Assembly: GCA_950097015.1 (NCBI GenBank)
Contig: CATNEN010000038.1
Coordinates: 8,246,001 to 8,310,000, forward strand
Direction: 5' to 3'
DNA: 64,000 bases
Source: Macrostomum hystrix
Lineage: Eukaryota > Animalia > Platyhelminthes
Below, in pieces: positions 40,310 through 59,624 of this stretch. Made by a program: the position numbers and the translations under genes. Below the pieces are notes generated by a model. That model was not told the origin of the DNA and ran no database searches. It worked only from the letters and a program-made list of their open reading frames with translations. How positions within the stretch are numbered: the stretch's first letter is position 1; each line of letters begins with the position of its first letter.

Positions 40310-40584
40310 CCATCACCTCATCTCACCTCACCTCACCTCATCTCACCTCATCTCACCTCATCTCACCTCACCTCATCTCATCTCACCTCACCTCACCTCA
40401 CCTCACCTCACCTCACCTCATCTCATCTCACCTCACCTCACCTCATCTCACCTCACCTCACCTCACCTCACCTCACCTCACCTCACCTCATCTCACCTCA
40501 CCTCATCTCACCTCACCTCACCTCAACTCACCTCACCTCATCCTCAACTCACCTCACCTCATCTCACCTCACCTCACCTCACCT
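40310..40584. repeat. Pentanucleotide microsatellite (CCTCA/TCTCA)n
   Basis: Direct observation. Confidence 0.95.
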
Positions 40585-40646: not shown

Positions 40647-40746
40647 TCACACGCAGGCCGTTCCCGTGCACTTCAGCTGCACTCGGCCCTGTGGCTCCCA
40701 GTTGGCAGCTATGACGATGACGCAGTCGAGACCGCTGCAGATCGAT

Positions 40747-40801
<55 letters not shown>

Positions 40802-42680
40802 AGTTGTATTTGGACGAGGCGCCGCCGCCGCTGAAGCCGCCACCGCCACCGGCAGGGCCAGTGACAGGGCTGGAGCTGTTGCAGCAACCGCCGGCTGCAC
40901 CTCCGCCACCGAAGCCGCCATCGCCGGTTGAGCAGCCCCCGACGCCGGAGCCACCCAGCCAGCCGACCGAGCGACTCAGGCCGGGACCGCCAGAGTTTGA
41001 GTAGCCAAACGACACAGCCGAGCTATTCCAGCCAGCGCCGGGACCGCCACAGGCCAAGTCTGTTGGTTCGCATGGCACCATGCCCGCAGAGCCCAGACTG
41101 CCGCCACTGCCGGTGTAACGATTTCCCGTAGGATTCGAATCCGTGCCATTCGGTCCATCGGTGCCGTGCATGCCTGAAAGAGTTGTCGTCGTCATGGGCA
41201 TGGTGCAAAGCCTGCAGCTGGTCCGTCTCGGGACACAGCGAGGTATATATATATATATGTAGTTTTAGCAGAAACAGAAACTGACTGACTACTCGTAATA
41301 TGCTCAAGCACTCACCACCCTTGTCATAGCCAACACCGCCGCCGCCTCCGGCTGCCAGGAGCAGTTGCAGACTCTCGATGCCACCGTTGCTGACGTACAC
41401 GAAGCTGCCGCCGCCGCCGCCTGCGCCCGACTGGCAGCGTGAGTTGCCGCCAGCCTGGCCCACAACAATGCTTAGTCGTGTACCGGCGGTGAGGTTGAAG
41501 CGACCAGAGGATGAGGCTCCCCTGCCACCGATTGGGCTGGAGCTTGTGCTGTTCCCACCACGGGCTCCGAAGGCCTCGATGCGGTAGCAGCAGGTAGTAT
41601 TGATGGTGACGTTCTGCACAGCTCCGAGCCTGCCAGTCCCGTAGGCTGGATTAGAACCGAGGGTGGATGGTTTAATTGCAAGTAAACTTGCATGTACGAC
41701 TACATTTTCTCTCGATCTCTCTCCGCGGCAGCCACCCCATTTTTATCGATCGTGCCGGCTGAAACACCATTATGGTAAATTGAAATGACGCCCAACCTAC
41801 CAGTTGGTATAACCTCTAAAACTTCTACTCCAGCGGATTCTGTTACTCATTGTTCTCTTCAGCGAGAAAGACATAAGAGTTTTAAAAAAGGTCTTTGATC
41901 TCTCTTTCTTTATCTTTGGCTCCCGTCTGGGCCACAATATATTTTTCTTAGCTGAGCGAGCCGGACGATGAAAAATACTCAAACCAAAAAAACCTTCACA
42001 AAAACTCATACGCGCACACAGAAAACTCTGATAACAATGCCAGTCGCGGAGTGGGGCGGACGGACAAGGGGGTAAGAAAAACCACGCACGAAACATCAAC
42101 CCCTCGCCAAACACTGGCCTACACCTCTCATCACAACACTCATTTTACACTCGGGAATAAAGTTACGTCCTGCTCAAATATAATTCTTGCATTTACAGCC
42201 GTACCGTTGATGACAACACTAATCGTAGCTCGAGTCTTCAGCTGCTGATGGATGTCGTCTGCTTTCCAGACTTCCGCCCCGCCGTGCGCTGGCGTGCTAA
42301 AATTTCTCGTCACGTGACTATCGCTCGGGCCCAGCTGGCCCAATGACTCATCGTTGATGACTAGCAGCTGGCATTGGCGGCTGGTCTCATTCACAACGGC
42401 GACAGCGCAACCTCTCACAAAGCACACCATGACACAGTGAATGTCCGAGATTAAATTTGGCTCGTTAATCAGGCTGCTGCTTACGGAGCTATCAATCAAA
42501 ATTGGGTTGTTATTCGAAACGAGTTGAAAATCACCCTTAGGACCGCCTGCAGCAGCTCCCGTCACTGAAACAGGTGCGATTGAGTGAAAAAGCCAAAAGC
42601 TTGAAACAACTGAATGCATGAACTCCGCACTTACGGGCTGTGCGAACAAGCAGCAGAGCAACAAATACCAGCAGATGCAT
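40647..42680 (-). CDS. Secreted protein: signal peptide, PAN/apple-like module and ALK/LTK-type glycine-rich domain
   Basis: Exons 42635-42680, 42205-42564, 41316-41645, 40647-41173 (GT-AG, all phase 1). Signal MHLLVFVALLLVRTALTG. PAN-like HCVMVCFVRGCAVAVVNETSRQCQL. Glycine-rich hallmarks YRIEAFGARGG, GGRGASSSGRFNLTAGTRLSIVVGQAG, GGGGGSFVY, LLAAGGGGG, GGFGGGG, GGGGGFSGG, GRVQL. No TM helix or kinase. Confidence 0.8.
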
Positions 42681-44223
42681 TGTTTTTGTAAGTTTAACGT
42701 TAGTTAAAGTTAAAGCTTTTCGACGAACAGGAGCAGACAGAAGCATGCATTAAAAGCCAGTGTGAGATGGCTTATTTATACACGTAGGCGCCAAGCCACT
42801 CGGCAGCCAATCAAAGCGCGATCCATTGAGCCTCCTACTTTCGTATCTTAGAGACTATCTGCAACTTCCACTGGATGGTCCGATCTCTCTGCCATATCTG
42901 ATATAAATAATATTCGGCAACAACGGCCCTGTTCCCATGCAATGCCTTCCAGGCTATGCATCGGAATCACTGACATGAAATATTGAATAATCAAAATTAC
43001 TAATCATAGTTCTTTGCTTCTTTAAAAACTTTTTTCTTTTTAGCATTATACAATTGAGATGCTGTACAGGTCGAAAAAAAGAATTTTTGAACTCTTTAAA
43101 CTTAGCATTTTGCATTGCTTTTATGGCACCCAAGTCGTGACGAGAATAACTAAAGTTATACGAGTATATCGGTCTTTATCTAATTCGTGTTTCGGCGACC
43201 CTGATTAAACATGATCAAGAGAAATTAAGTTAAATTAGCTAGATTAAGGCGCCGCTACTGTACTGATGCCACGTGGAGCTCGTTAATCGTATTTGAAGGA
43301 GCTAATTATGAGCACATAATAGGGCCTTGACTTAGCTACAGGTTCATCGGGCCGAGCGGATGCAGCTAGTATAGGTGGAGAGGACCGGCCATTTTGCTGG
43401 CCCCTTGCCTTAGATTTTAGGGGATGGTGGCTACCCAAAATGCAGAGTTAATTAAGTGCAGTATTTTTGTGCGGTAAATTGTCTCTCTCTATTTGCGCTG
43501 TCTGTCTATAATAACTGCCATGGAATATTCGACAACTATACTAAACGTCTCTTAGACAATAAATTTATAATTGTCCCAAAATATAACTGAATTTTCGTTT
43601 ATAAATTGTTCGGCCTATTTATTCGGGTGTATGAATAGCGAGCGAGCGGACTAGCGCTAGCGAATCCGCTACAGCGAATCAATGTTAGCAAAGGTCGGCT
43701 TGCAGATTTTCTGCAAATATCGTGCTCTATTACTATTAGTGACCATTAAATTATGGCAAAAGCTTCAATTTAAAATTCATTTTAATTTTTCTGGCATGCT
43801 CTATACAAAATTAGTTACTTTTAATTTTGCGCCTACGCTTTCTTAATTAACGTATTAGTTAGATACAACTAGTGTTATGTATAAATAATTGTTTATTTAA
43901 ATCTTTCCAGGAAAGAAAAACAACTAAGTCCTATATTATAATATCATGTTACGTTACGTTGATTGCTGGTGTGGGTTTTTCACACCCCAGACCACGTATT
44001 AATTTCCCAATTGACATTCACATTCACATTCACATTCAAACAAGAGTATTGTAACTTAAAAAATAACCATTCAATTACAGCGAAACTTACAAGATCTTCT
44101 GATGCAATTAAGATAACGTTCCAAAATAAATATAATTTATTTTTATCAATGCATAAAAGAATTACTCTGCTTTGAAGTTTGTTCCTATCTCCGCAGTGTA
44201 TATTCTTGTACTTTCAAAAAGTA

Positions 44224-47200
44224 ACTTCTACTGCATCAATCGCAGTGAAAATTTACAAAACCTCTGATGCAATCGAGTTGATTGGATGTGTAAAATTTCA
44301 GACTGATTCATGAAAGCGTCTGCGGGTTATTCAATGTTAAAGTGTGTTTCGTATCTCCGTAGTGTATTTTTGGGAGCCAGCTTGACATTCGCAGGCAGAC
44401 ACTTCTACTGCATCAATCGCAATGAAAATTTACAAAACCTCTGATGCAATCGAGTTGATTGGATGAGTAAAATTTCAGGCTGATTCATGAATGCGTCTGC
44501 GGGTTATTCAATGTTAAAGTGTGTTTCGTATCTCCGTAGTGTAATATTTTTGGGAGCCAGCTTGACATTCGCAGGCAGACACTTCTACTGCATCAATCGC
44601 AATGAAAATTTACAAAACCTCTGATGCAATCGAGTTGATTGGATGTGTAAAATTTCAGGCTGATTCATGAAAGCGTCTGCGGGTTATTCAATGTTAAAGT
44701 GTGTTTCGTATCTCCGTAGTGTATTTTTGGGAGCCAGCTTGACATTCGCAGGCAGACACTTCTACTGCATCAATCGCAATGAAAATTTACAAAACCTCTG
44801 ATGCAATCGAGTTGATTGGATGTGTAAAATTTCAGACTGATTCATGAAAGCGTCTGCGGGTTATTCAATGTTAAAGTGTGTTTCGTATCTCCGTAGTGTA
44901 ATATTTTTGGGAGCCAGCTTGACATTCGCAGGCAGACACTTCTACTGCATCAATCGCAATGAAAATTTACAAAACCTCTGATGCAATCGAGTTGATTGGA
45001 TGTGTAAAATTTCAGACTGATTCATGAAAGCGTCTGCGGGTTATTCAATGTTAAAGTGTGTTCGTATCTCCGTAGTGTATTTTTGGGAGCCAGCTTGACA
45101 TTCGCAGGCAGACACTTCTACTGCATCAATCGCAATGAAAATTTACAAAACCTCTGATGCAATCGAGTTGATTGGATGTGTAAAATTTCAGACTGATTCA
45201 TGAAAGCGTCTGCGGGTTATTCAATGTTAAAGTGTGTTTCGTATCTCCGTAGTGTATTTTTGGGAGCCAGCTTGACATTCGCAGGCAGACACTTCTACTG
45301 CATCAATCGCAATGAAAATTTACAAAACCTCTGATGCAATCGAGTTGATTGGATGTGTAAAATTTCAGGCTGATTCATGAAAGCGTCTGCGGGTTATTCA
45401 ATGTTAAAGTGTGTTTCGTATCTCCGTAGTGTAATATTTTTGGGAGCCAGCTTGACATTCGCAGGCAGACACTTCTACTGCATCAATCGCAATGAAAATT
45501 TACAAAACCTCTGATGCAATCGAGTTGATTGGATGTGTAAAATTTCAGACTGATTCATGAAAGCGTCTGCGGGTTATTCAATGTTAAAGTGTGTTCGTAT
45601 CTCCGTAGTGTATTTTTGGGAGCCAGCTTGACATTCGCAGGCAGACACTTCTACTGCATCAATCGCAATGAAAATTTACAAAACCTCTGATGCAATCGAG
45701 TTGATTGGATGTGTAAAATTTCAGACTGATTCATGAAAGCGTCTGCGGGTTATTCAATGTTAAAGTGTGTTTCGTATCTCCGTAGTGTATTTTTGGGAGC
45801 CAGCTTGACATTCGCAGGCAGACACTTCTACTGCATCAATCGCAATGAAAATTTACAAAACCTCTGATGCAATCGAGTTGATTGGATGAGTAAAATTTCA
45901 GGCTGATTCATGAATGCGTCTGCGGGTTATTCAATGTTAAAGTGTGTTTCGTATCTCCGTAGTGTATTTTTGGGAGCCAGCTTGACATTCGCAGGCAGAC
46001 ACTTCTACTGCCTCAATCGCAATGCAAATTTACAAAACCTCTGATGCAATCGAGTTGATTGGATGTGTAAAATTTCAGGCTGATTCATGAAAGCGTCTGC
46101 GGGTTATTCAATGTTAAAGTGTGTTCGTATCTCCGTAGTGTATTTTTGGGAGCCAGCTTGACATTCGCAGGCAGACACTTCTACTGCATCAATCGCAATG
46201 AAAATTTACAAAACCTCTGATGCAATCGAGTTGATTGGATGTGTAAAATTTCAGACTGATTCATGAAAGCGTCTGCGGGTTATTCAATGTTAAAGTGTGT
46301 TTCGTATCTCCGTAGTGTATTTTTGGGAGCCAGCTTGACATTCGCAGGCAGACACTTCTACTGCATCAATCGCAATGAAAATTTACAAAACCTCTGATGC
46401 AATCGAGTTGATTGGATGTGTAAAATTTCAGGCTGATTCATGAAAGCGTCTGCGGGTTATTCAATGTTAAAGTGTGTTTCGTATCTCCGTAGTGTATTTT
46501 TGGGAGCCAGCTTGACATTCGCAGGCAGACACTTCTACTGCCTCAATCGCAATGAAAATTTACAAAACCTCTGATGCAATCGAGTTGATTGGATGTGTAA
46601 AATTTCAGGCTGATTCATGAAAGCGTCTGCGGGTTATTCAATGTTAAAGTGTGTTTCGTATCTCCGTAGTGTAATATTTTTGGGAGCCAGCTTGACATTC
46701 GCAGGCAGACACTTCTACTGCATCAATCGCAATGAAAATTTACAAAACCTCTGATGCAATCGAGTTGATTGGATGTGTAAAATTTCAGACTGATTCATGA
46801 AAGCGTCTGCGGGTTATTCAATGTTAAAGTGTGTTCGTATCTCCGTAGTGTATTTTTGGGAGCCAGCTTGACATTCGCAGGCAGACACTTCTACTGCATC
46901 AATCGCAATGAAAATTTACAAAACCTCTGATGCAATCGAGTTGATTGGATGTGTAAAATTTCAGACTGATTCATGAAAGCGTCTGCGGGTTATTCAATGT
47001 TAAAGTGTGTTTCGTATCTCCGTAGTGTATTTTTGGGAGCCAGCTTGACATTCGCAGGCAGACACTTCTACTGCATCAATCGCAATGAAAATTTACAAAA
47101 CCTCTGATGCAATCGAGTTGATTGGATGAGTAAAATTTCAGGCTGATTCATGAATGCGTCTGCGGGTTATTCAATGTTAAAGTGTGTTTCGTATCTCCGT

Positions 47201-50200
47201 AGTGTATTTTTGGGAGCCAGCTTGACATTCGCAGGCAGACACTTCTACTGCCTCAATCGCAATGCAAATTTACAAAACCTCTGATGCAATCGAGTTGATT
47301 GGATGTGTAAAATTTCAGGCTGATTCATGAAAGCGTCTGCGGGTTATTCAATGTTAAAGTGTGTTCGTATCTCCGTAGTGTATTTTTGGGAGCCAGCTTG
47401 ACATTCGCAGGCAGACACTTCTACTGCATCAATCGCAATGAAAATTTACAAAACCTCTGATGCAATCGAGTTGATTGGATGTGTAAAATTTCAGACTGAT
47501 TCATGAAAGCGTCTGCGGGTTATTCAATGTTAAAGTGTGTTTCGTATCTCCGTAGTGTATTTTTGGGAGCCAGCTTGACATTCGCAGGCAGACACTTCTA
47601 CTGCATCAATCGCAATGAAAATTTACAAAACCTCTGATGCAATCGAGTTGATTGGATGTGTAAAATTTCAGGCTGATTCATGAAAGCGTCTGCGGGTTAT
47701 TCAATGTTAAAGTGTGTTTCGTATCTCCGTAGTGTATTTTTGGGAGCCAGCTTGACATTCGCAGGCAGACACTTCTACTGCCTCAATCGCAATGAAAATT
47801 TACAAAACCTCTGATGCAATCGAGTTGATTGGATGTGTAAAATTTCAGGCTGATTCATGAAAGCGTCTGCGGGTTATTCAATGTTAAAGTGTGTTTCGTA
47901 TCTCCGTAGTGTAATATTTTTGGGAGCCAGCTTGACATTCGCAGGCAGACACTTCTACTGCATCAATCGCAATGAAAATTTACAAAACCTCTGATGCAAT
48001 CGAGTTGATTGGATGTGTAAAATTTCAGGCTGATTCATGAAAGCGTCTGCGGGTTATTCAATGTTAAAGTGTGTTTCGTATCTCCGTAGTGTATTTTTGG
48101 GAGCCAGCTTGACATTCGCAGGCAGACACTTCTACTGCATCAATCGCAATGAAAATTTACAAAACCTCTGATGCAATCGAGTTGATTGGATGTGTAAAAT
48201 TTCAGACTGATTCATGAAAGCGTCTGCGGGTTATTCAATGTTAAAGTGTGTTTCGTATCTCCGTAGTGTATTTTTGGGAGCCAGCTTGACATTCGCAGGC
48301 AGACACTTCTACTGCATCAATCGCAATGAAAATTTACAAAACCTCTGATGCAATCGAGTTGATTGGATGTGTAAAATTTCAGGCTGATTCATGAAAGCGT
48401 CTGCGGGTTATTCAATGTTAAAGTGTGTTTCGTATCTCCGTAGTGTAATATTTTTGGGAGCCAGCTTGACATTCGCAGGCAGACACTTCTACTGCATCAA
48501 TCGCAATGAAAATTTACAAAACCTCTGATGCAATCGAGTTGATTGGATGTGTAAAATTTCAGACTGATTCATGAAAGCGTCTGCGGGTTATTCAATGTTA
48601 AAGTGTGTTCGTATCTCCGTAGTGTATTTTTGGGAGCCAGCTTGACATTCGCAGGCAGACACTTCTACTGCCTCAATCGCAATGCAAATTTACAAAACCT
48701 CTGATGCAATCGAGTTGATTGGATGTGTAAAATTTCAGGCTGATTCATGAAAGCGTCTGCGGGTTATTCAATGTTAAAGTGTGTTCGTATCTCCGTAGTG
48801 TATTTTTGGGAGCCAGCTTGACATTCGCAGGCAGACACTTCTACTGCATCAATCGCAATGCAAATTTACAAAACCTCTGATGCAATCGAGTTGATTGGAT
48901 GTGTAAAATTTCAGGCTGATTCATGAAAGCGTCTGCGGGTTATTCAATTTTAAAGTGTGTTTCGTATCTCCGTAGTGTATTTTTGGGAGCCAGCTTGACA
49001 TTCGCAGGCAGACACTTCTACTGCCTCAATCGCAATGAAAATTTACAAAACCTCTGATGCAATCGAGTTGATTGGATGTGTAAAATTTCAGACTGATTCA
49101 TGAAAGCGTCTGCGGGTTATTCAATGTTAAAGTGTGTTTCGTATCTCCGTAGTGTATTTTTGGGAGCCAGCTTGACATTCGCAGGCAGACACTTCTACTG
49201 CATCAATCGCAATGAAAATTTACAAAACCTCTGATGCAATCGAGTTGATTGGATGTGTAAAATTTCAGGCTGATTCATGAAAGCGTCTGCGGGTTATTCA
49301 ATGTTAAAGTGTGTTTCGTATCTCCGTAGTGTAATATTTTTGGGAGCCAGCTTGACATTCGCAGGCAGACACTTCTACTGCATCAATCGCAATGAAAATT
49401 TACAAAACCTCTGATGCAATCGAGTTGATTGGATGTGTAAAATTTCAGGCTGATTCATGAAAGCGTCTGCGGGTTATTCAATGTTAAAGTGTGTTTCGTA
49501 TCTCCGTAGTGTATTTTTGGGAGCCAGCTTGACATTCGCAGGCAGACACTTCTACTGCATCAATCGCAATGAAAATTTACAAAACCTCTGATGCAATCGA
49601 GTTGATTGGATGTGTAAAATTTCAGACTGATTCATGAAAGCGTCTGCGGGTTATTCAATGTTAAAGTGTGTTTCGTATCTCCGTAGTGTATTTTTGGGAG
49701 CCAGCTTGACATTCGCAGGCAGACACTTCTACTGCATCAATCGCAATGAAAATTTACAAAACCTCTGATGCAATCGAGTTGATTGGATGTGTAAAATTTC
49801 AGGCTGATTCATGAAAGCGTCTGCGGGTTATTCAATGTTAAAGTGTGTTTCGTATCTCCGTAGTGTAATATTTTTGGGAGCCAGCTTGACATTCGCAGGC
49901 AGACACTTCTACTGCATCAATCGCAATGAAAATTTACAAAACCTCTGATGCAATCGAGTTGATTGGATGTGTAAAATTTCAGGCTGATTCATGAAAGCGT
50001 CTGCGGGTTATTCAATGTTAAAGTGTGTTTCGTATCTCCGTAGTGTATTTTTGGGAGCCAGCTTGACATTCGCAGGCAGACACTTCTACTGCATCAATCG
50101 CAATGAAAATTTACAAAACCTCTGATGCAATCGAGTTGATTGGATGTGTAAAATTTCAGACTGATTCATGAAAGCGTCTGCGGGTTATTCAATGTTAAAG

Positions 50201-50907
50201 TGTGTTTCGTATCTCCGTAGTGTAATATTTTTGGGAGCCAGCTTGACATTCGCAGGCAGACACTTCTACTGCATCAATCGCAATGAAAATTTACAAAACC
50301 TCTGATGCAATCGAGTTGATTGGATGTGTAAAATTTCAGGCTGATTCATGAAAGCGTCTGCGGGTTATTCAATGTTAAAGTGTGTTTCGTATCTCCGTAG
50401 TGTAATATTTTTGGGAGCCAGCTTGACATTCGCAGGCAGACACTTCTACTGCATCAATCGCAATGAAAATTTACAAAACCTCTGATGCAATCGAGTTGAT
50501 TGGATGTGTAAAATTTCAGACTGATTCATGAAAGCGTCTGCGGGTTATTCAATGTTAAAGTGTGTTCGTATCTCCGTAGTGTATTTTTGGGAGCCAGCTT
50601 GACATTCGCAGGCAGACACTTCTACTGCCTCAATCGCAATGCAAATTTACAAAACCTCTGATGCAATCGAGTTGATTGGATGTGTAAAATTTCAGGCTGA
50701 TTCATGAAAGCGTCTGCGGGTTATTCAATGTTAAAGTGTGTTCGTATCTCCGTAGTGTATTTTTGGGAGCCAGCTTGACATTCGCAGGCAGACACTTCTA
50801 CTGCCTCAATCGCAATGCAAATTTACAAAACCTCTGATGCAATCGAGTTGATTGGATGTGTAAAATTTCAGACTGATTCATGAAAAGCGTCTGCGGGTTA
50901 TTCAATG
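44224..50907 (+). repeat. Satellite array, 176/177/180-bp monomer, ~38 copies (left arm)
   Basis: Monomer CTTCTACTGCATCAATCGCAATGAAAATTTACAAAACCTCTGATGCAATCGAG...GCAGGCAGACA. Few recurrent variant sites. Confidence 0.97.
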
Positions 50908-51625
50908 TGTTGTGATTTAATAGTTTCTATGTACTGTATTTAATAGTTTCTATGTACTGTATTTTTCGGTGCACTTTCACAGTCGCGTTGCACTTTGAGT
51001 CGCCCCCCTGCCCCTTTCTTGCTCTGCGCCTGCCTGCCTATCAATTTCTCCCACCCCTGGCGTCTGATTGGTTGAGCTAAGACGTTGGGTACCCCCGGTT
51101 ATTGTCATCTTCCGTTCATGCCCTCTCATTGGTTCGCGGCTCGCCCAGTTGTCTTATTGACCCTGCGTGATTGGCGAGGCTGCGACTGGTTCTCTCTGTT
51201 ACTGTCTCTTACTTTCTCTCTCTACCCTGCAGCTTAGCCGTGATCGGGTATTACCCTGCTCACCCTGGGTGAGCAGGTCTTATTTATTGGCGTGCGCGCG
51301 CTCGTCCCCCTCGGACGTGACTGTTTTGTTTTGTTGAGCACCCCAACCACCGCCTACCAGACAAAATACATCAACTCAGCCAGCTCTCCCGAGCGCAAAC
51401 CCGCACTGCAAGCCTACGTAAGTGTCGTCTGCCTCTGTCTTTTCGGGTTCAGTCACTAGGACTTTGTCGCCAGGGCCTGTGCATTCGTTGCGACCTTGGT
51501 TGCCGGCTTACTGCCTGTGCGTCTAGTGCGACAGTAGGCCGACACATAGTAGGACGGAAGTGCTGAACCTCCCTGCTCGTCCTGAGCGAGAGGCGAAGCC
51601 GGCTGGCCCGTCTCGGGACACAACA
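50908..51625 (+). mobile_element. 5' LTR (718 bp) of a Gypsy-like retrotransposon
   Basis: TGTTGTG...CACAACA terminal inverted repeat; interrupts a satellite monomer; followed directly by PBS and gag. Confidence 0.85.
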
Positions 51626-51626
51626 T

Positions 51627-51644
51627 TGGTGTCGTGACCAGGAT
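51627..51644 (+). promoter_or_regulatory. Primer binding site, tRNA-His-like
   Basis: TGGTGTCGTGACCAGGAT, 1 nt after the LTR; close to the complement of the tRNA-His 3' end (TGGTGCCGTGACTCGGAT). Confidence 0.75.
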
Positions 51645-51789
51645 AGTTCGTGCCTGTTAGGATCCTCGACCCCATGTGTTAATTAGCTTAGGGATTCTGT
51701 TCAGGAGGGGTGTTTTCTAGGACTTTTGTCAGTGCTTTGTTGTTGCCGTGAGATTTTTTATCTTGTGATTCGAGGATTTTGTTGTCGTC

Positions 51790-52968
51790 ATGGGAGACGA
51801 ACGAGTGAATCGCCTCGTGGAGCTGATGACTGCTTCGGTGCGTCGGACCTTGCAGCAGGAGATAAATGCAGCGCAGAATGTCCAGAGGCCAGCGAAGCCG
51901 CCGAAGTATTCTAGTGGAGACAACTTTCGCCTGTGGTTGCAGAAGTTCAACGCTTATTGTGATGCTGCGCAGATTGCGGAGGCCGCTCGAAGGCCGCACC
52001 TGCTTAGCTTCTTGGATTTGAATACAGCATTTGCAGCGGTGGAGAATCTACAGCTGGGTGAGGATCTGGAATATCAGGAGTTTACGGACGCTCTGTTGGA
52101 AAGGTTTCAGCAGCACCGCACGACTGAAGATTACCGGATGGAGCTGGAGTCACGAGTGCAGAAGGAGGGCGAGACCTACGAGGCATACGCCGATGCACTG
52201 CTGGAGCTGGCGAGGAATGCCTACCCTGAAGACGAGCTGCCCGCTGAGATTGTCAACAGTTTTGCAAGGGACAGATTCAAGAAGGGCATTAAGGCTGCTG
52301 AGAGCGTCAAGGAGTACGTGATCCTTCAACAGCCTGCTACTCTCGCTGAGGCTGTGCGTTGCGTTCGACGAAAGGAGGCAGCTACTCTAGCCGCCAAGAC
52401 GTCAGGCTCGGACCAGACCTCCAGGAAGACGACATCAGGTGTGGCTGCCGTGGACACCAGAGCCGCCAGTTCAGAAGGTTTTGGAGCGCTTCAGCAGCGG
52501 ATCCGTGAGCTGGAAGACCAACTGAAGCGGCTGAGCCAGACGCCGCCTCCTCGACAGTCTGCTGCACCGTCGCCTGCTGGGTCTGCGCGTCCGCGCGGCC
52601 CGGGGCCCGGGTTGCTAGGAGACAGGGGGGCCTGCGCGTACGCCGCGACCCCTAGTCGTCTAGCAGAGCAACAGCAGAGGCAGCATGGTGCTTGCTTTCA
52701 GTGCGGAGACGTCGGCCACCTAGCGCGTGAGTGTCCTAGTCGCGTCGGAAGGATGCAGCAACCGCCACCGAGCACAGCAGCGATGACTGTTGGTCCAAGG
52801 CGTTGCTACGCGTGCAACCAGCCAGGTCATCTGGCCAAGAATTGTCGGTTGGGAAACTTTAGCAGGGCGAAAACTGATTTATTCGTTCAAAAATACTACA
52901 ATAAGACACTTAAACAACTCAACACTAAAAAATTCTCATTAAATCACACAGCCCCTCTTTTACTGTAA
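51790..52968 (+). CDS. gag: Gypsy-like Gag with two CCHC zinc knuckles; element truncated at ~52870 (pol and 3' LTR missing)
   Basis: PPKYSSGDNFRLWLQKF; RVQKEGETYEAYADAL (major homology region-like); CFQCGDVGHLAREC and CYACNQPGHLAKNC; GGGAAAC slippery site at 52851-52857. The last ~30 aa are read-through into AT-rich non-LTR sequence. Confidence 0.88.
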   Translation: MGDERVNRLVELMTASVRRTLQQEINAAQNVQRPAKPPKYSSGDNFRLWLQKFNAYCDAAQIAEAARRPHLLSFLDLNTAFAAVENLQLGEDLEYQEFTDALLERFQQHRTTEDYRMELESRVQKEGETYEAYADALLELARNAYPEDELPAEIVNSFARDRFKKGIKAAESVKEYVILQQPATLAEAVRCVRRKEAATLAAKTSGSDQTSRKTTSGVAAVDTRAASSEGFGALQQRIRELEDQLKRLSQTPPPRQSAAPSPAGSARPRGPGPGLLGDRGACAYAATPSRLAEQQQRQHGACFQCGDVGHLARECPSRVGRMQQPPPSTAAMTVGPRRCYACNQPGHLAKNCRLGNFSRAKTDLFVQKYYNKTLKQLNTKKFSLNHTAPLLL

Positions 52969-53045
52969 AAAAACTACACAGGCTGATTTATAAGCCCGCG
53001 AAGATCAATTGCCTTGAATTCATTGCGAGCTGATGTCGAGCTGCA

Positions 53046-54968
53046 CTGGCTCCCAAAAATACACTTCGGAGATACGAAACACACTTTAACATTGAATAAC
53101 CCGAAGACGCTTTCATGAATCAGTCTGAAATTTTACACATCCAATCAACTCGATTGCATCAGAGGTTTTGTAAATTTGCATTGCGATTGAGGCAGTAGAA
53201 GTGTCTGCCTGCGAATGTCAAGCTGGCTCCCAAAAATACACTACGGAGATACGAACACACTTTAACATTGAATAACCCGCAGACGCTTTCATGAATCAGT
53301 CTGAAATTTTACACATCCAATCAACTCGATTGCATCAGAGGTTTTGTAAATTTTCATTGCGATTGAGGCAGTAGAAGTGTCTGCCTGCGAATGTCAAGCT
53401 GGCTCCCAAAAATACACTACGGAGATACGAAACACACTTTAAAATTGAATAACCCGCAGACGCTTTCATGAATCAGCCTGAAATTTTACACATCCAATCA
53501 ACTCGATTGCATCAGAGGTTTTGTAAATTTTCATTGCGATTGATGCAGTAGAAGTGTCTGCCTGCGAATGTCAAGCTGGCTCCCAAAAATACACTACGGA
53601 GATACGAAACACACTTTAACATTGAATAACCCGCAGACGCTTTCATGAATCAGCCTGAAATTTTACACATCCAATCAACTCGATTGCATCAGAGGTTTTG
53701 TAAATTTTCATTGCGATTGAGGCAGTAGAAGTGTCTGCCTGCGAATGTCAAGCTGGCTCCCAAAAATACACTACGGAGATACGAAACACACTTTAACATT
53801 GAATAACCCGCAGACGCTTTCATGAATCAGCCTGAAATTTTACACATCCAATCAACTCGATTGCATCAGAGGTTTTGTAAATTTTCATTGCGATTGATGC
53901 AGTAGAAGTGTCTGCCTGCGAATGTCAAGCTGGCTCCCAAAAATACACTACGGAGATACGAACACACTTTAACATTGAATAACCCGCAGACGCTTTCATG
54001 AATCAGCCTGAAATTTTACACATCCAATCAACTCGATTGCATCAGAGGTTTTGTAAATTTGCATTGCGATTGAGGCAGTAGAAGTGTCTGCCTGCGAATG
54101 TCAAGCTGGCTCCCAAAAATACACTACGGAGATACGAACACACTTTAACATTGAATAACCCGCAGACGCTTTCATGAATCAGTCTGAAATTTTACACATC
54201 CAATCAACTCGATTGCATCAGAGGTTTTGTAAATTTTCATTGCGATTGAGGCAGTAGAAGTGTCTGCCTGCGAATGTCAAGCTGACTCCCAAAAATACAC
54301 TACGGAGATACGAAACACACTTTAAAATTGAATAACCCGCAGACGCTTTCATGAATCAGCCTGAAATTTTACACATCCAATCAACTCGATTGCATCAGAG
54401 GTTTTGTAAATTTTCATTGCGATTGATGCAGTAGAAGTGTCTGCCTGCGAATGTCAAGCTGGCTCCCAAAAATACACTACGGAGATACGAAACACACTTT
54501 AACATTGAATAACCCGCAGACGCTTTCATGAATCAGCCTGAAATTTTACACATCCAATCAACTCGATTGCATCAGAGGTTTTGTAAATTTTCATTGCGAT
54601 TGATGCAGTAGAAGTGTCTGCCTGCGAATGTCAAGCTGGCTCCCAAAAATACACTACGGAGATACGAACACACTTTAACATTGAATAACCCGCAGACGCT
54701 TTCATGAATCAGTCTGAAATTTTACACATCCAATCAACTCGATTGCATCAGAGGTTTTGTAAATTTTCATTGCGATTGATGCAGTAGAAGTGTCTGCCTG
54801 CGAATGTCAAGCTGGCTCCCAAAAATACACTACGGAGATACGAACACACTTTAACATTGAATAACCCGCAGACGCTTTCATGAATCAGTCTGAAATTTTA
54901 CACATCCAATCAACTCGATTGCATCAGAGGTTTTGTAAATTTTCATTGCGATTGATGCAGTAGAAGTT
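53046..54968 (-). repeat. Satellite array, same monomer in inverted orientation, ~11 copies (right arm)
   Basis: Reverse complement of the left-arm monomer with the same variant sites. Confidence 0.97.
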
Positions 54969-55416
54969 ACTTTTTGAAAGTACAAGAATATACACTGCGG
55001 AGATAGGAACAAACTTCAAAGCTGTGTAATTCTTTTATGCATTGACAAAAATAAATTATATTTATTTTGGAACGTTATCTTAGTTGCATCAGAAGATCTT
55101 GTAAGTTTCGCTGTAATTGAATGGTTATTTTTTAAGTTACAATACTCTTGTTTGAATGTGAATGTGAATGTGAATGTCAATCGGGAAATTAATACGTCCC
55201 CAGACCTTCGTACTATCCAAAAAATCAAACTATCAAATTAAAATATCAACTATCATCAAATTTATAAAAAGTTACCAATCAAATTAAAGGTTAACTTTGT
55301 GATAACCCGCGCACTGGGGTGTTTTCCCTCACCTTTTTCTCCCTCGCACACTGCACATGGCCTATTTGTTTTACTATAGAGATGCACCTTTGTTTTAATT
55401 TGCTCATCATGCATGT

Positions 55417-57441: not shown

Positions 57442-59624
57442 ATGTCGGTGCCATTGCTTGATGCCATCAACGGTGGCTGCAGCAGCAGTTCAGAGCAGGC
57501 AGCTGCCACTGAGGACGAGTGGATCCGCACTGGAGCCCAGTACACAGCCCTGCAGCGCTTGTCCATGTCACTTCTACGCCAGGGTCCCCTGCCCCGCCAC
57601 CTGGCTATCATCATGGACGGCAATCGCCGATTTGCCCGCTGTCACGGCCTGCAGAAGGCGCAGGGTCATCTGCGCGGCTTCAAGAAGGTCGGCGAAGTGC
57701 TGGAATGGTGCCGCGATCTGGGCGTGGACGAGGTGACAGTCTACGCGTTCAGCATCGAGAATTTTAACCGTAGCCAGGAGGAGGTGGCCTGCCTGATGCA
57801 GCTGGCCAGGGAGAAGTTTGACCGGCTGCTGCAGGAGCTGGACAGGCTGCGGACCTACGGCGTCTGCGTCCGGATCATCGGCAATCTGGACCTGCTGCCA
57901 GCTGACATCCGGGCCGCCGCTGCCCGGGTTATGCTGGCTACAAGGTGAACAGTTAGAATGCATTGCTATGTATTCACCAAAATACTTTTTCAAAGCTCTG
58001 GCTTCGATTTAGAATTCCCCTGTTTCCATTTCCCAGTTTCTCGCACTTAAATCCCATATCCTGGCTTCCCAACTCCCACACACCCCAAATCCCAAATTAT
58101 GGCCTCCACCACACCCCAAATCCCATATCCTGTCCTCCGCCACACTCCCAAATCCCATATTCTCGACTCCCAACTCGCACACACCCCACACTCCCAAATC
58201 CCATTTCCTGGCCTGCCCAACAACCAAATCCCATTTTTTGGCTTCCCCCACACCCTAAATCCCATTGTTTGGCCTCCCCCACACGCCATATCCTGGCCTC
58301 CACTACACCCTAAAATCCCATATCTTGGCCTCCCACACCCTAAAATCCCATATCTTGGCCTCCCACACCCTAAAACCCGATATCTTGGCCTCCCACATCC
58401 TAAAACCCGATATCTTGGCTTCCCCCACACCCAAAAACCCGATATCTTGGCCTCCCACACGCTAAAACCCGATATCTTGGCTTCCCCCACACCCTAAAAT
58501 CCCATATCCTGGCCTCCCACATTCCGAAATCCCATATCCTGGCCTCCCCCACATCCCAAATCCTGGCCTCCCCCACACCACATCCCAAATCCTAGCCTCC
58601 CCCACACCACACCCCAAATCCTAGCCTCCCCCACACCCCAAATCCTGGCCTCCCCACACCCCAAATCCTGGCCTCCCCACACCCCAAATCCTGGCCTCCC
58701 CACACCCCAAATCCTGGCCTCCCCCACACCCCAAATCCTGGCCTCCCCCACACCCCAAATCCTGGCCTCACCCACACTCCAAATCCTGGCCTCCCCCACA
58801 CTCCAAATCCTGGCCTCCCCCACACCCAAATCCTGGCCTCCCCCACACCCCAAATCAGGTTTTTTCAAAAATTCGCAATTCGATTTCGCAGAGAGCACAC
58901 CAAAGCCCGCTTGAACGTGTGCTTCGCTTACACCTCGCGTGATGACATGGCCCACTCCGCCTCGCTGGCTGGCGAAGCTGTTCGCTCGGGCCTGCTTGTG
59001 CCCGATGACGTCACTCCGCGACTGCTCGATCGATGCGCGCGCACTTACTTATCGCCGGCGCCTCCTGATTTGTTGATTCGGACATCTGGCGAGGCTAGAT
59101 TGTCAGATTTTCTGCTTTGGCAGGTGAGAATTTAAACTTTTGATTTCTACGTTTTCTGTACTTTTCTATACATATCGGGTGTATGCTAATTAAAAATCTT
59201 CCTGGCTAATTATTTTCAGACTAGATTCACCTGCGTTCACTTTGTGAATGCAATGTGGCCAGACTTCTCTGTGTGGCACCTGATGTGGGCCGTGTTTAAT
59301 TATCAAAGAAACTATGCAACAATGCAGGTGAGACAACATTTTGTAAATATAGTTTTTAGACTGGCCTTGTTTGTACACGCTACTGGCGCGTGTTTCTCAA
59401 GGCCACATGTCCCATTCGGTATTTTGCACTAGTAATTTGCTGTCAATTACCGCCCATCTGCCACCCAGTCTGGCCTGGCCGCCCTGGCAGCCGAGGAGGA
59501 CGAAGAGGATCGATCCCTGGCCAGGCGAGATCCTCAGTGGAGCCGGCGTGTCCTGGCATTTGATCAGTTTGTTCGGGACAAAGAGGAAGCCAACCTCAAG
59601 CGGTACCTGGCGGCTGAGAACTAA
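57442..59624 (+). CDS. DHDDS: Dehydrodolichyl diphosphate synthase (cis-prenyltransferase)
   Basis: Exons 57442-57944, 58892-59123, 59220-59327, 59469-59624 (GT-AG, in frame). Motifs PRHLAIIMDGNRRFA, VTVYAFSIENFNRS, LNVCFAYTSR, PDLLIRTSGEARLSDFLLWQ, WPDFSVW. Confidence 0.95.
58045..58856. repeat. C-rich ~24-30-bp minisatellite in DHDDS intron 1
   Basis: (CCCCAAATCCTGGCCTCCCCCACA)n and (CCTAAAATCCCATATCTTGGCCTCCCACAC)n variants. Confidence 0.9.

What the first reader, a model, noticed from the sequence alone, without database searches (positions are those of the whole stretch)
43994..55197. Giant foldback transposon whose inverted arms are nucleosome-sized (~177 bp) satellite arrays
Seen: a perfect 9-bp TSD (CCCCAGACC) flanks 11.2 kb bounded by ~230-bp near-identical inverted termini. 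Each terminus runs directly into an array of the same 176-180-bp monomer, ~38 copies forward and ~11 copies reverse. Diverged monomer-like sequence occurs in the outer TIR (~44075-44225) and at the inner edge of the right arm (~52990-53100). Known: Foldback/Mutator-like elements make 9-bp TSDs and have modular repeat-containing TIRs, and a few Drosophila elements have been proposed to seed satellites this way. Inference: a mobile satellite-generating element caught expanding a centromere-satellite-length monomer between ordinary genes. The ACGT termini are atypical of canonical MULEs, so the family may be new.
Basis: partly seen in the sequence, partly recalled or inferred. Interest (0 to 1): 0.82.

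Follow-up and report, generated by a model that had tools for sequence, protein, structure and literature searches.

The report
Foldback jumping gene with satellite arms
This is a real, recently mobile "foldback" cut-and-paste jumping gene of an invertebrate (reportedly a flatworm) whose two inverted ends have grown into arrays of a 177-base repeat. The kind is already known from flies and beetles, so it is a good new example rather than a new kind of element.

Summary
An 11,204-bp element (43994-55197) lies between perfect 9-bp duplications (CCCCAGACC). It has 230-bp inverted ends (97.8% alike) that run into 37.6 forward and 10.9 reverse copies of a ~177-bp monomer.

It is not an assembly artefact. 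The same genome holds 17 end-paired copies (1.0-11.2 kb), and 14 of them have perfect 9-bp duplications, all different. Arms range from 1 to 38 monomers, and copy-specific block duplications show that the arrays grow in place.

It is a fixed 2,137-bp passenger, a retrotransposon LTR plus an intact 392-aa gag-like ORF. Ten copies carry it whole and one in part (98.8-99.9% identical).

The element has no transposase. Two sibling copies keep remnants of a DDE transposase and a Ulp1-like protease. These remnants match intact genes inside giant (about 14-29 kb) foldback elements of the same genome, whose arms are 170-bp arrays. That protein family (DDE + Ulp1/C48 + PHD) looks like the fly FB-NOF / Rehavkus branch of Mutator.

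I found no evidence for a centromere role and no arrays outside elements. Tetris (Drosophila) and Rehavkus (Tribolium) already show this biology, and this scan has already described sister foldback families elsewhere in this genome. Verdict: new member of a known kind.

The parts
43985..43993 (.). Left target-site duplication CCCCAGACC
   Evidence: Identical 9-mer at 55198-55206.
43994..44223 (+). Left outer terminal inverted repeat (flanking domain). It starts ACGTATTAATTTCCC, holds (ATTCAC)x4.8 at 44010-44038 and a diverged monomer at 44070-44208.
   Evidence: 225/230 identical to the right end in inverted orientation. The 22-nt terminus occurs 45 times in the genome, against 0 for the reversed control. 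The monomer-like part has z = 8.5.
44224..50908 (+). Left arm: 37.6 tandem copies of the ~177-bp monomer (177/180-bp alternation, 357-bp dimer). It includes a duplicated 7-monomer block, 45435-46674 and 46675-47914.
   Evidence: TRF; 1,240-bp offset of the inverted-repeat hits; variant string FBXKBAY x2 and private multi-copy variants.
50909..51625 (+). Retrotransposon LTR (717 bp, TGTTG...CAACA), joined directly to a truncated monomer.
   Evidence: The same 717 bp occurs alone at other loci at 81-98% identity. TG..CA ends read.
51626..51789 (+). Leader with a PBS-like TGG start (TTGGTGTCGTGACC...)
   Evidence: Read. No tRNA gene with the exact 14-nt complement was found, so the PBS is unverified.
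51790..52968 (+). Intact 392-aa gag-like ORF with two CCHC zinc knuckles. Gag homology ends at about residue 360 (52867); the last ~32 residues are read-through.
   Evidence: Pfam zf-CCHC E = 1e-12, weak PNMA and Retrotrans_gag. Intact in 8 copies. Homology limits.
52868..53045 (.). AT-rich inner segment, probably a remnant of the original foldback centre or inner arm
   Evidence: 147 bp are shared at 89% with the different centre of copy L076. Weak monomer likeness, z about 2.6.
53046..54967 (-). Right arm: 10.9 monomers, reverse complement of the left arm
54968..55197 (-). Right outer terminal inverted repeat
55198..55206 (.). Right target-site duplication CCCCAGACC

Best explanation
The element is a non-autonomous foldback DNA transposon.

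Shown:
- It is one of at least 17 end-paired copies of a young family. The copies inserted at unrelated sites with 9-bp target duplications.
- Each end consists of a 230-bp outer domain followed by a variable array of a ~177-bp monomer. That monomer is itself a diverged duplicate of part of the outer domain.
- The arrays change length inside individual copies by duplication of multi-monomer blocks.
- The centre of this subfamily is a retrotransposon LTR-plus-gag fragment with identical junctions in all carriers. It therefore entered once and now travels as a passenger.

Inferred:
- The family is moved in trans by a DDE transposase of the Foldback-NOF / Rehavkus branch of the Mutator superfamily, which makes 9-bp staggered cuts.
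- The monomers carry extra transposase-binding sites, which would favour their multiplication. Unequal exchange or replication slippage in the repeats then drives further growth.
- The original transposase + Ulp1-protease gene was lost by internal deletion, leaving remnants in sibling copies.
- No intact transposase matched to these termini was found, so the current source of transposase is unknown.
For: Mobility and family:
- 45 termini in the genome against 0 for the control.
- 17 paired copies; 14 of 17 have perfect 9-bp TSDs, all different.
- Centres are 98.8-99.9% identical, while arms range from 1 to 38 monomers.
- Copy-private block duplications: window FBXKBAY x2, L064 CQRMCBN x2, L068 IAE x3.
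- The outer TIR contains a diverged monomer, z = 8.5.

Passenger:
- The same 2,137-bp centre lies whole in 10 copies and in part in 1.
- The LTR also occurs alone elsewhere.
- The gag has CCHC knuckles.

Superfamily:
- The centre of copy L075 keeps the E-motif region of a transposase (55% aa identity to L079, E = 3e-18; 34% to L080).
- The centre of copy L074 keeps a Ulp1-like remnant (E = 7e-13).
- L080 is an intact 958-aa protein with conserved D, D, CxxH and N..E..K motifs, a C48-like part and a C-terminal PHD-like part.
- It sits between inverted 170-bp arrays of at least 8.4 kb each.
- Its AlphaFold model (pLDDT 81.6) matches DDE transposases: P element and the IS256-family ISCth4, prob 0.98-0.99.
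- Two homologues point to 'NOF-FB transposable element protein' clusters that carry C48 and PHD, with Mutator (MULE) clusters next.

Literature:
- Rehavkus has a 9-bp TSD, long TIRs, a PHD finger and subterminal tandem repeats (PMC6446971).
- In Tribolium it carries 164-bp and similar satellites in its inverted termini, with up to 50 monomers (PMC10218199, PMC12581902).
Against: - This copy, and every copy with these termini, lacks a transposase.
- None of the 41 Pfam MULE-domain hits in the genome lies within 10 kb of a terminus.
- The giant L080-type elements do not show the same 14-nt terminus near their arms, so cross-mobilisation is doubtful.
- The nearest relatives of the remnant are themselves broken.
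- Pfam's MULE model does not hit the transposase family.
- The NOF link rests on a language-model and predicted-structure look-alike search, not on an alignment to a reference NOF or Rehavkus sequence.
- Binding of transposase to the monomers is assumed by analogy.
- The length of the 38-copy array cannot be verified without reads.
Confidence: 0.8

Rival explanations
1. Assembly fold-back artefact: the inverted arms arise from chimeric or palindromic reads, not from the genome.
For: Inverted tandem arrays are a classic place for misassembly, and no reads were available here. The exact number of monomers (38 and 11) is unverified.
Against: The same architecture recurs at 16 other loci on 11 contigs: outer TIR, array, identical 2,137-bp centre, inverted array, TIR. 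Each locus has its own flanks, and 13 of the 16 have their own perfect 9-bp TSD.
Confidence: 0.02
2. A foldback structure that evolved convergently in another superfamily. On this reading the element is moved by a non-Mutator transposase, and the remnants in L074 and L075 are unrelated passengers, as the gag is.
For: Foldback architecture has arisen more than once; for example, Galileo belongs to the P superfamily (discussed in PMC4079207). The centres of this family demonstrably pick up foreign DNA: the LTR-gag, and a 4.6-kb unknown insert in L076. The top solved-structure match of the related transposase is the P element.
Against: The 9-bp TSD fits Mutator/Foldback/Rehavkus, not P (7-8 bp) or hAT (8 bp). 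Two different copies keep two different parts (DDE E-motif, Ulp1) of the same kind of protein, and that protein sits intact in satellite-armed foldback elements of this genome. Look-alike searches give NOF-FB and MULE, not P.
Confidence: 0.13
3. A pre-existing genomic (possibly centromeric) 177-bp satellite that a transposon merely captured. On this reading the arrays are primarily host satellite DNA.
For: The monomer length is typical of satellites. Long satellite blocks are often missing from assemblies, so absence here is weak evidence.
Against: All 150 listed monomer matches lie inside the 17 paired copies. Those copies hold about 267 of the at least 279 matches. The monomer is a diverged copy of the element's own outer TIR, which points to an origin inside the element.
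Confidence: 0.05

Closest known systems
Tetris foldback transposon of Drosophila virilis (PMC4079207)
   Same: Non-autonomous. Each TIR is an outer flanking domain plus a variable array of ~220-bp repeats that share a stretch with the flanking domain. It has a middle domain without a transposase, 8-10-bp TSDs and array growth inside elements. No autonomous partner was found.
   Different: Different host phylum and unrelated sequence. Here the monomer is 177 bp, the family has many intact TSD-flanked copies (14, against 3), no element-free arrays were seen, and the middle domain is a defined LTR-gag passenger.
Rehavkus elements (RepeatMasker class MULE-NOF), e.g. Rehavkus-1_TC and Rehavkus-3_TC of Tribolium (PMC6446971, PMC10218199, PMC12581902)
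   Same: 9-bp TSD, long TIRs and subterminal tandem repeats of satellite length (164 bp in Rehavkus-1_TC), with up to about 50 monomers per inverted terminus. The transposase has a PHD finger. The related autonomous elements in this genome have the same layout.
   Different: Dupeyron et al. list Rehavkus hosts as arthropods and annelids. This host is reportedly a flatworm (not verified here). No alignment to a Repbase Rehavkus transposase could be made, and this copy has no transposase.
Drosophila melanogaster FB / FB-NOF
   Same: Inverted arms built of tandem repeats and a 9-bp TSD (the TSD length is from my own knowledge). A large central protein (NOF) occurs in some copies. Look-alike searches link the flatworm protein family to NOF clusters that carry C48 and PHD domains.
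   Different: FB arm repeats are short (tens of bp), not ~177 bp. The relationship is a lead from predicted-structure and feature similarity, not from an alignment.
Pack-MULE / passenger-carrying DNA transposons
   Same: Foreign sequence between the TIRs is amplified together with the element.
   Different: The passenger here is a retrotransposon 5' LTR + gag rather than host gene fragments. It probably entered by nested insertion and later truncation, not by the capture mechanism proposed for Pack-MULEs.

Membership tests
Foldback elements (structural class) | Long inverted arms composed largely of tandem repeats, with a short or variable centre | tested here: met
   Arms of 6.9 and 2.2 kb made of 177-bp repeats. 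Sibling copies L061 and L069 are essentially arms only.
Foldback elements (structural class) | Mobile: multiple copies at unrelated sites, each with its own target-site duplication | tested here: met
   17 paired copies; 14 have perfect, different 9-bp TSDs.
Mutator superfamily, NOF/Rehavkus branch | 9-bp target-site duplication | tested here: met
   Table 1 of PMC6446971 gives 9 bp for Rehavkus.
Mutator superfamily, NOF/Rehavkus branch | Long TIRs with subterminal tandem repeats | tested here: met
   PMC6446971; PMC12581902.
Mutator superfamily, NOF/Rehavkus branch | Element encodes, or descends from an element encoding, a DDE transposase with a PHD finger | tested here: inconclusive
   This copy encodes none. 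Siblings L075 and L074 keep transposase and Ulp1 remnants. The related intact protein L080 has a C-terminal Cys/His cluster that Pfam PHD hits only at E = 0.4. Eight of 31 homologues hit PHD at E down to 3e-8.
Mutator superfamily, NOF/Rehavkus branch | Transposase groups with reference NOF/Rehavkus sequences in an alignment or tree | not testable with these tools
   No reference sequence was available. There are only look-alike leads to 'NOF-FB transposable element protein' clusters.
Canonical MULE (Pfam PF10551) | Match to the MULE transposase domain model | tested here: not met
   None of 31 family members matches PF10551 at E <= 0.01. None of the 41 PF10551 hits in the genome lies near a terminus. 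The fold is nevertheless a DDE RNase-H type, with the IS256-family ISCth4 among the best matches.
Galileo-type (P superfamily) foldback | 7-8-bp TSD and a THAP/P-type transposase | tested here: not met
   The TSD is 9 bp in 14 copies. The 7-8-bp value is from my own knowledge and from the discussion in PMC4079207.
Centromeric satellite | Long monomer arrays at centromeres, bound by CENP-A | not testable with these tools
   In the assembly the monomers are confined to the transposon copies. There are no cytological data.

The most novel reading that the evidence does not exclude
The composite is more than a junk passenger. A DNA transposon has taken over an LTR promoter and an intact gag gene and has spread at least 8 intact copies of it. 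Either the element or the host might use the capsid-like protein, a route to gag domestication by DNA transposition. Alternatively, these foldback arms might be the nursery of the species' satellite or centromere repeats.
Probability: 0.06. Interest if true: 0.6.

Novelty: new member of a known kind. Interest (0 to 1): 0.36.

Why it matters
The family gives an unusually clean, assembly-level view of how a transposon end becomes a satellite:
- one family with 17 dated copies;
- arms of 1 to 38 monomers;
- visible block duplications;
- a monomer that derives from the element's own terminus.

Unlike Tetris, this genome also holds related intact elements whose transposase gene lies between satellite arms of 8 kb and more. 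The link between transposase and repeats is therefore testable.

It probably extends the NOF/Rehavkus-type foldback elements to another animal phylum. It also shows a retrotransposon gag gene being copied by a DNA transposon. It does not reveal a new kind of element.

Tried and rejected
1. Autonomous partner. Terminus patterns (22-mer with up to 2 mismatches, 14-mer with up to 1) were cross-checked against the 41 Pfam MULE hits and against the NOF-like genes. None lay within 10 kb.
2. Solo terminus at C12:2120289 (L077). It is a 171-bp TIR stump next to unrelated DNA.
3. Parent retrotransposon. The only close gag outside the family (L078, 98% nt) has no pol and no LTR in front.
4. Selection on gag. 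There are 10 variable sites, 4 synonymous and 6 non-synonymous, which is too few to tell.
5. PBS check. No tRNA gene has the 14-nt complement.
6. Empty site. The left flank is unique in the assembly.
7. Word-index protein searches. They gave nothing for gag and 2 hits for the transposase. DHDDS showed only that the host is an animal.
8. PDB by sequence. No meaningful match.
9. Rfam on the element. No hit, so there is no twister ribozyme here. The 'miRNA' hits in L069 are hairpin artefacts.
10. Termini and TSDs of the giant L080-type elements.
11. An inversion between two copies on contig C7 as the cause of the missing TSD of L062. The flanks do not match.

Full report
**Observation**

Tandem Repeats Finder reports two arrays of one 177-bp unit (a 357-bp dimer is also detected). 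The first spans 44224-50908, with 37.6 copies and 98% matches. The second spans 53046-54967, with 10.9 copies. The two arrays are reverse complements of each other at 99%.

Outside the arrays lie 230-bp end domains that are 225/230 identical in inverted orientation. The element starts ACGTATTAATTTCCC at 43994 and ends with the complement at 55197. It is flanked by CCCCAGACC at 43985-43993 and at 55198-55206.

Positions 77-215 of the end domain align collinearly with a monomer. The score is 81, against 31 +/- 5.8 for 500 shuffles. The array unit is therefore a diverged duplicate of part of the terminus.

**A mobile family, not an artefact**

The window is C38:8246001-8310000 of a 220-Mb, 42-contig assembly.

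- The 221-bp end domain has 40 scored matches at 88-100% identity.
- The 22-nt terminus occurs 45 times, against 0 for the reversed control.
- The matches pair up into 17 elements of 998 to 11,204 bp. I fetched the other 16 (L061-L076).
- Thirteen of those 16 have perfect 9-bp duplications, all different and without a consensus. One (L075) is imperfect, one (L073) has a damaged end, and one (L062) has none.

Arms hold from 1 to 38 monomers. Monomers differ by only about 1.4-1.6%, whether compared within an arm, between the arms of one copy, or between copies.

Strings of exact variants show copy-private block duplications: FBXKBAY twice in the window (45435-47914), CQRMCBN twice in L064, and IAE three times in L068. 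Several variants are multi-copy in one element only. The arrays therefore grow in place after insertion.

All 150 listed monomer matches lie in these 17 copies. Those copies hold about 267 of the at least 279 matches. I saw no element-free array, but counts of repeats from this tool are lower bounds.

The left flank is unique in the assembly, so no empty site is available.

**The centre**

The 2,137 bp between the arms (50909-53045) recur with identical junctions in 10 copies, and partly in an eleventh, at 98.8-99.9% identity and in either orientation. They consist of four parts.

- A 717-bp unit runs from 50909 to 51625 and has TGTTG...CAACA ends. It also occurs alone at other loci at 81-98% identity, so it is an LTR.
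- A leader follows, starting with TGG. Its 14-nt complement is found in no tRNA gene of the assembly, so the primer-binding site is unverified.
- An intact 392-aa ORF spans 51790-52968. It has two CCHC knuckles (E = 1e-12) and weak PNMA and Retrotrans_gag matches.
- A 178-bp AT-rich stretch ends the centre. 147 bp of it are shared at 89% with the otherwise different centre of L076.

Gag homology stops at about residue 360 (52867). The rest of the ORF is read-through.

The only close gag outside the family (L078, 98% nt) has neither pol nor an upstream LTR.

Eight copies keep the ORF intact. With 4 synonymous and 6 non-synonymous variable sites, this needs no selection; the copies are simply young.

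My reading is as follows. A retrotransposon inserted into the inner part of a foldback element and lost its 3' part. The composite then spread as a subfamily. I only compared these copies and built no consensus.

**Which transposase**

No copy with these termini encodes one. None of the 41 Pfam MULE-domain hits of the genome lies within 10 kb of a terminus.

Two sibling copies that lack the LTR-gag keep remnants:

- The 409-bp centre of L075 encodes the region around a catalytic-E motif (SNAHIESWFGNVK). It is 55% identical (E = 3e-18) to a frameshifted gene at C38:18.27 Mb (L079) and 34% identical to an intact gene at C25:7.16 Mb (L080).
- The centre of L074 keeps a Ulp1-like stretch that matches the same two loci (E = 7e-13 and 1e-5).

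L080's protein is 958 aa once an in-frame 33-bp minisatellite is set aside. It has:

- an N-terminal Cys/His cluster;
- conserved LDATGS, TDFSWA, CxxH and N..VE..F..VK motifs;
- a C48-like HSCGVFVC region;
- a C-terminal PHD-like cluster.

A scan of 1.8 billion representative proteins finds 868 relatives, including ones from a mussel, a sea cucumber and a barnacle. Of 31 relatives scanned, 8 match Pfam PHD, 3 match Peptidase_C48 and none matches the MULE model.

An AlphaFold model of the core has pLDDT 81.6 and pTM 0.74. Its best solved-structure matches are all DDE transposases: P element, the IS256-family ISCth4, RAG1, Transib and Hermes.

For two homologues the protein atlas gives clusters named after the fly 'NOF-FB transposable element' protein (C48 in 45% and PHD in 34% of members). 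Mutator (MULE) clusters come next. These are leads, not alignments.

**The intact relatives are foldback elements too**

L080's gene is followed by a 170-bp tandem array. In the genome that array lies on the + strand from C25:7149491 to 7157911 and on the - strand from 7169472 to 7177972. The arms are thus at least 8.4 kb each around an 11.6-kb centre.

The same layout recurs on C11 and C24. Arrays on one listed side accompany further gene copies on C24, C31 and C38.

Their arms are not near any match to the window family's 14-nt terminus. They are therefore a sister lineage, and probably not the source of transposase for this family.

A below-threshold twister-P1 match (40.5 bits, E = 1e-5) lies between L080's gene and its arm. 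The window element has no Rfam match.

**What is known**

Dupeyron et al. characterise Rehavkus by a 9-bp TSD, TIRs of 26-400 bp, a PHD finger and a minisatellite. They treat it as the sister group of Mutator (PMC6446971).

In Tribolium, Rehavkus elements are called foldback transposons. They carry satellites (for example a 164-bp unit) in their inverted termini, with up to 50 monomers and termini over 11 kb. One such repeat expanded to an 80-kb array in a sibling species (PMC10218199, PMC12581902).

Tetris of Drosophila virilis has the same three-part TIR, a repeat that shares sequence with the outer domain, 8-10-bp TSDs and no known autonomous copy (PMC4079207).

RepeatMasker's class name MULE-NOF is in common use (for example PMC12694884). 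That it corresponds to Rehavkus is my recollection, not something I tested.

**Earlier notes of this scan**

Other agents have already described, elsewhere in this genome, an intact 25-kb foldback element with arms of a 170-bp repeat (s1-853587). By its position it is a copy of the L080 family. They also described a twister ribozyme next to such an arm (s1-850360) and several NOF-type foldback transposases (for example s1-848205).

I reached the L080 family independently, through the L075 remnant. Their notes agree with mine but are not independent proof.

They call the host a Macrostomum-type flatworm. I could only confirm an animal host, from the DHDDS gene at 57442-57948, whose best database identity is 59%.

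**Verdict**

The structure is real and the foldback reading is right. The element is a non-autonomous member of a known kind, the NOF/Rehavkus-type foldback transposons with satellite arms. Its passenger, an LTR plus gag, is unusual.

The centromere idea has no support. The claim of a new family holds only in the trivial sense that the sequence is new.

Noticed in passing
L080:1218-1272 (-) = C25:7158017-7158071: Match to the type-P1 twister ribozyme (40.5 bits, E = 1e-5, below Rfam's gathering score). It lies between the 3' end of the NOF-like transposase gene and the 170-bp satellite arm. The window element has no such match.
   Followed up: partly
L080:4653-6813: A 33-bp minisatellite (65.5 copies) lies directly upstream of the transposase coding region. 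It is free of stop codons in three frames of the gene's strand and in one frame of the other strand. It therefore inflates the mechanical ORF to 1,744 aa.
   Followed up: partly
L076:2393-3925 (-) (C27:617091-623137): A diverged family copy carries a different 4.6-kb centre with a 510-aa ORF. The ORF has a thrice-repeated Arg/Ser-rich block, a conserved-looking C-terminal region, no Pfam match and no similarity to the transposase.
   Followed up: partly
L062 (C7:12090842-12099191): This otherwise intact 8,350-bp copy has no target-site duplication (flanks ATTTTTCGA and GAAAAATTA). That suggests a rearrangement between copies. The nearby half-copy at C7:12723040 does not supply the matching flank.
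   Followed up: partly
L078:1861-2967 (+) (C1:15448860-15449966): A stand-alone 368-aa gag-like ORF is 98% identical in DNA to the passenger. It has no pol and no LTR in front. A block of tandem repeats lies upstream (L078:822-1356), and an 84% LTR copy lies 4.8 kb downstream.
   Followed up: partly
L069:2790-3050: Rfam 'miRNA' matches (MIR8001, MIR8562, mir-3926) arise only because the two arms meet in a near-perfect hairpin. They are artefacts of the palindrome.
   Followed up: yes
window 40313-40584 and 58073-58856: A (TCACC)x54 microsatellite, and a block of 24-31-bp C-rich minisatellites (units such as CCCACACCCTAAATCCCATATCTTGGCCT), lie in the DNA around the insertion.
   Followed up: no
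window 40647-42664 (-) and 57442-57948 (+): The neighbouring genes are glycine-rich ORFs on the minus strand (not identified) and an exon of dehydrodolichyl diphosphate synthase (DHDDS, Pfam PF01255 in all hits). The element is intergenic.
   Followed up: partly
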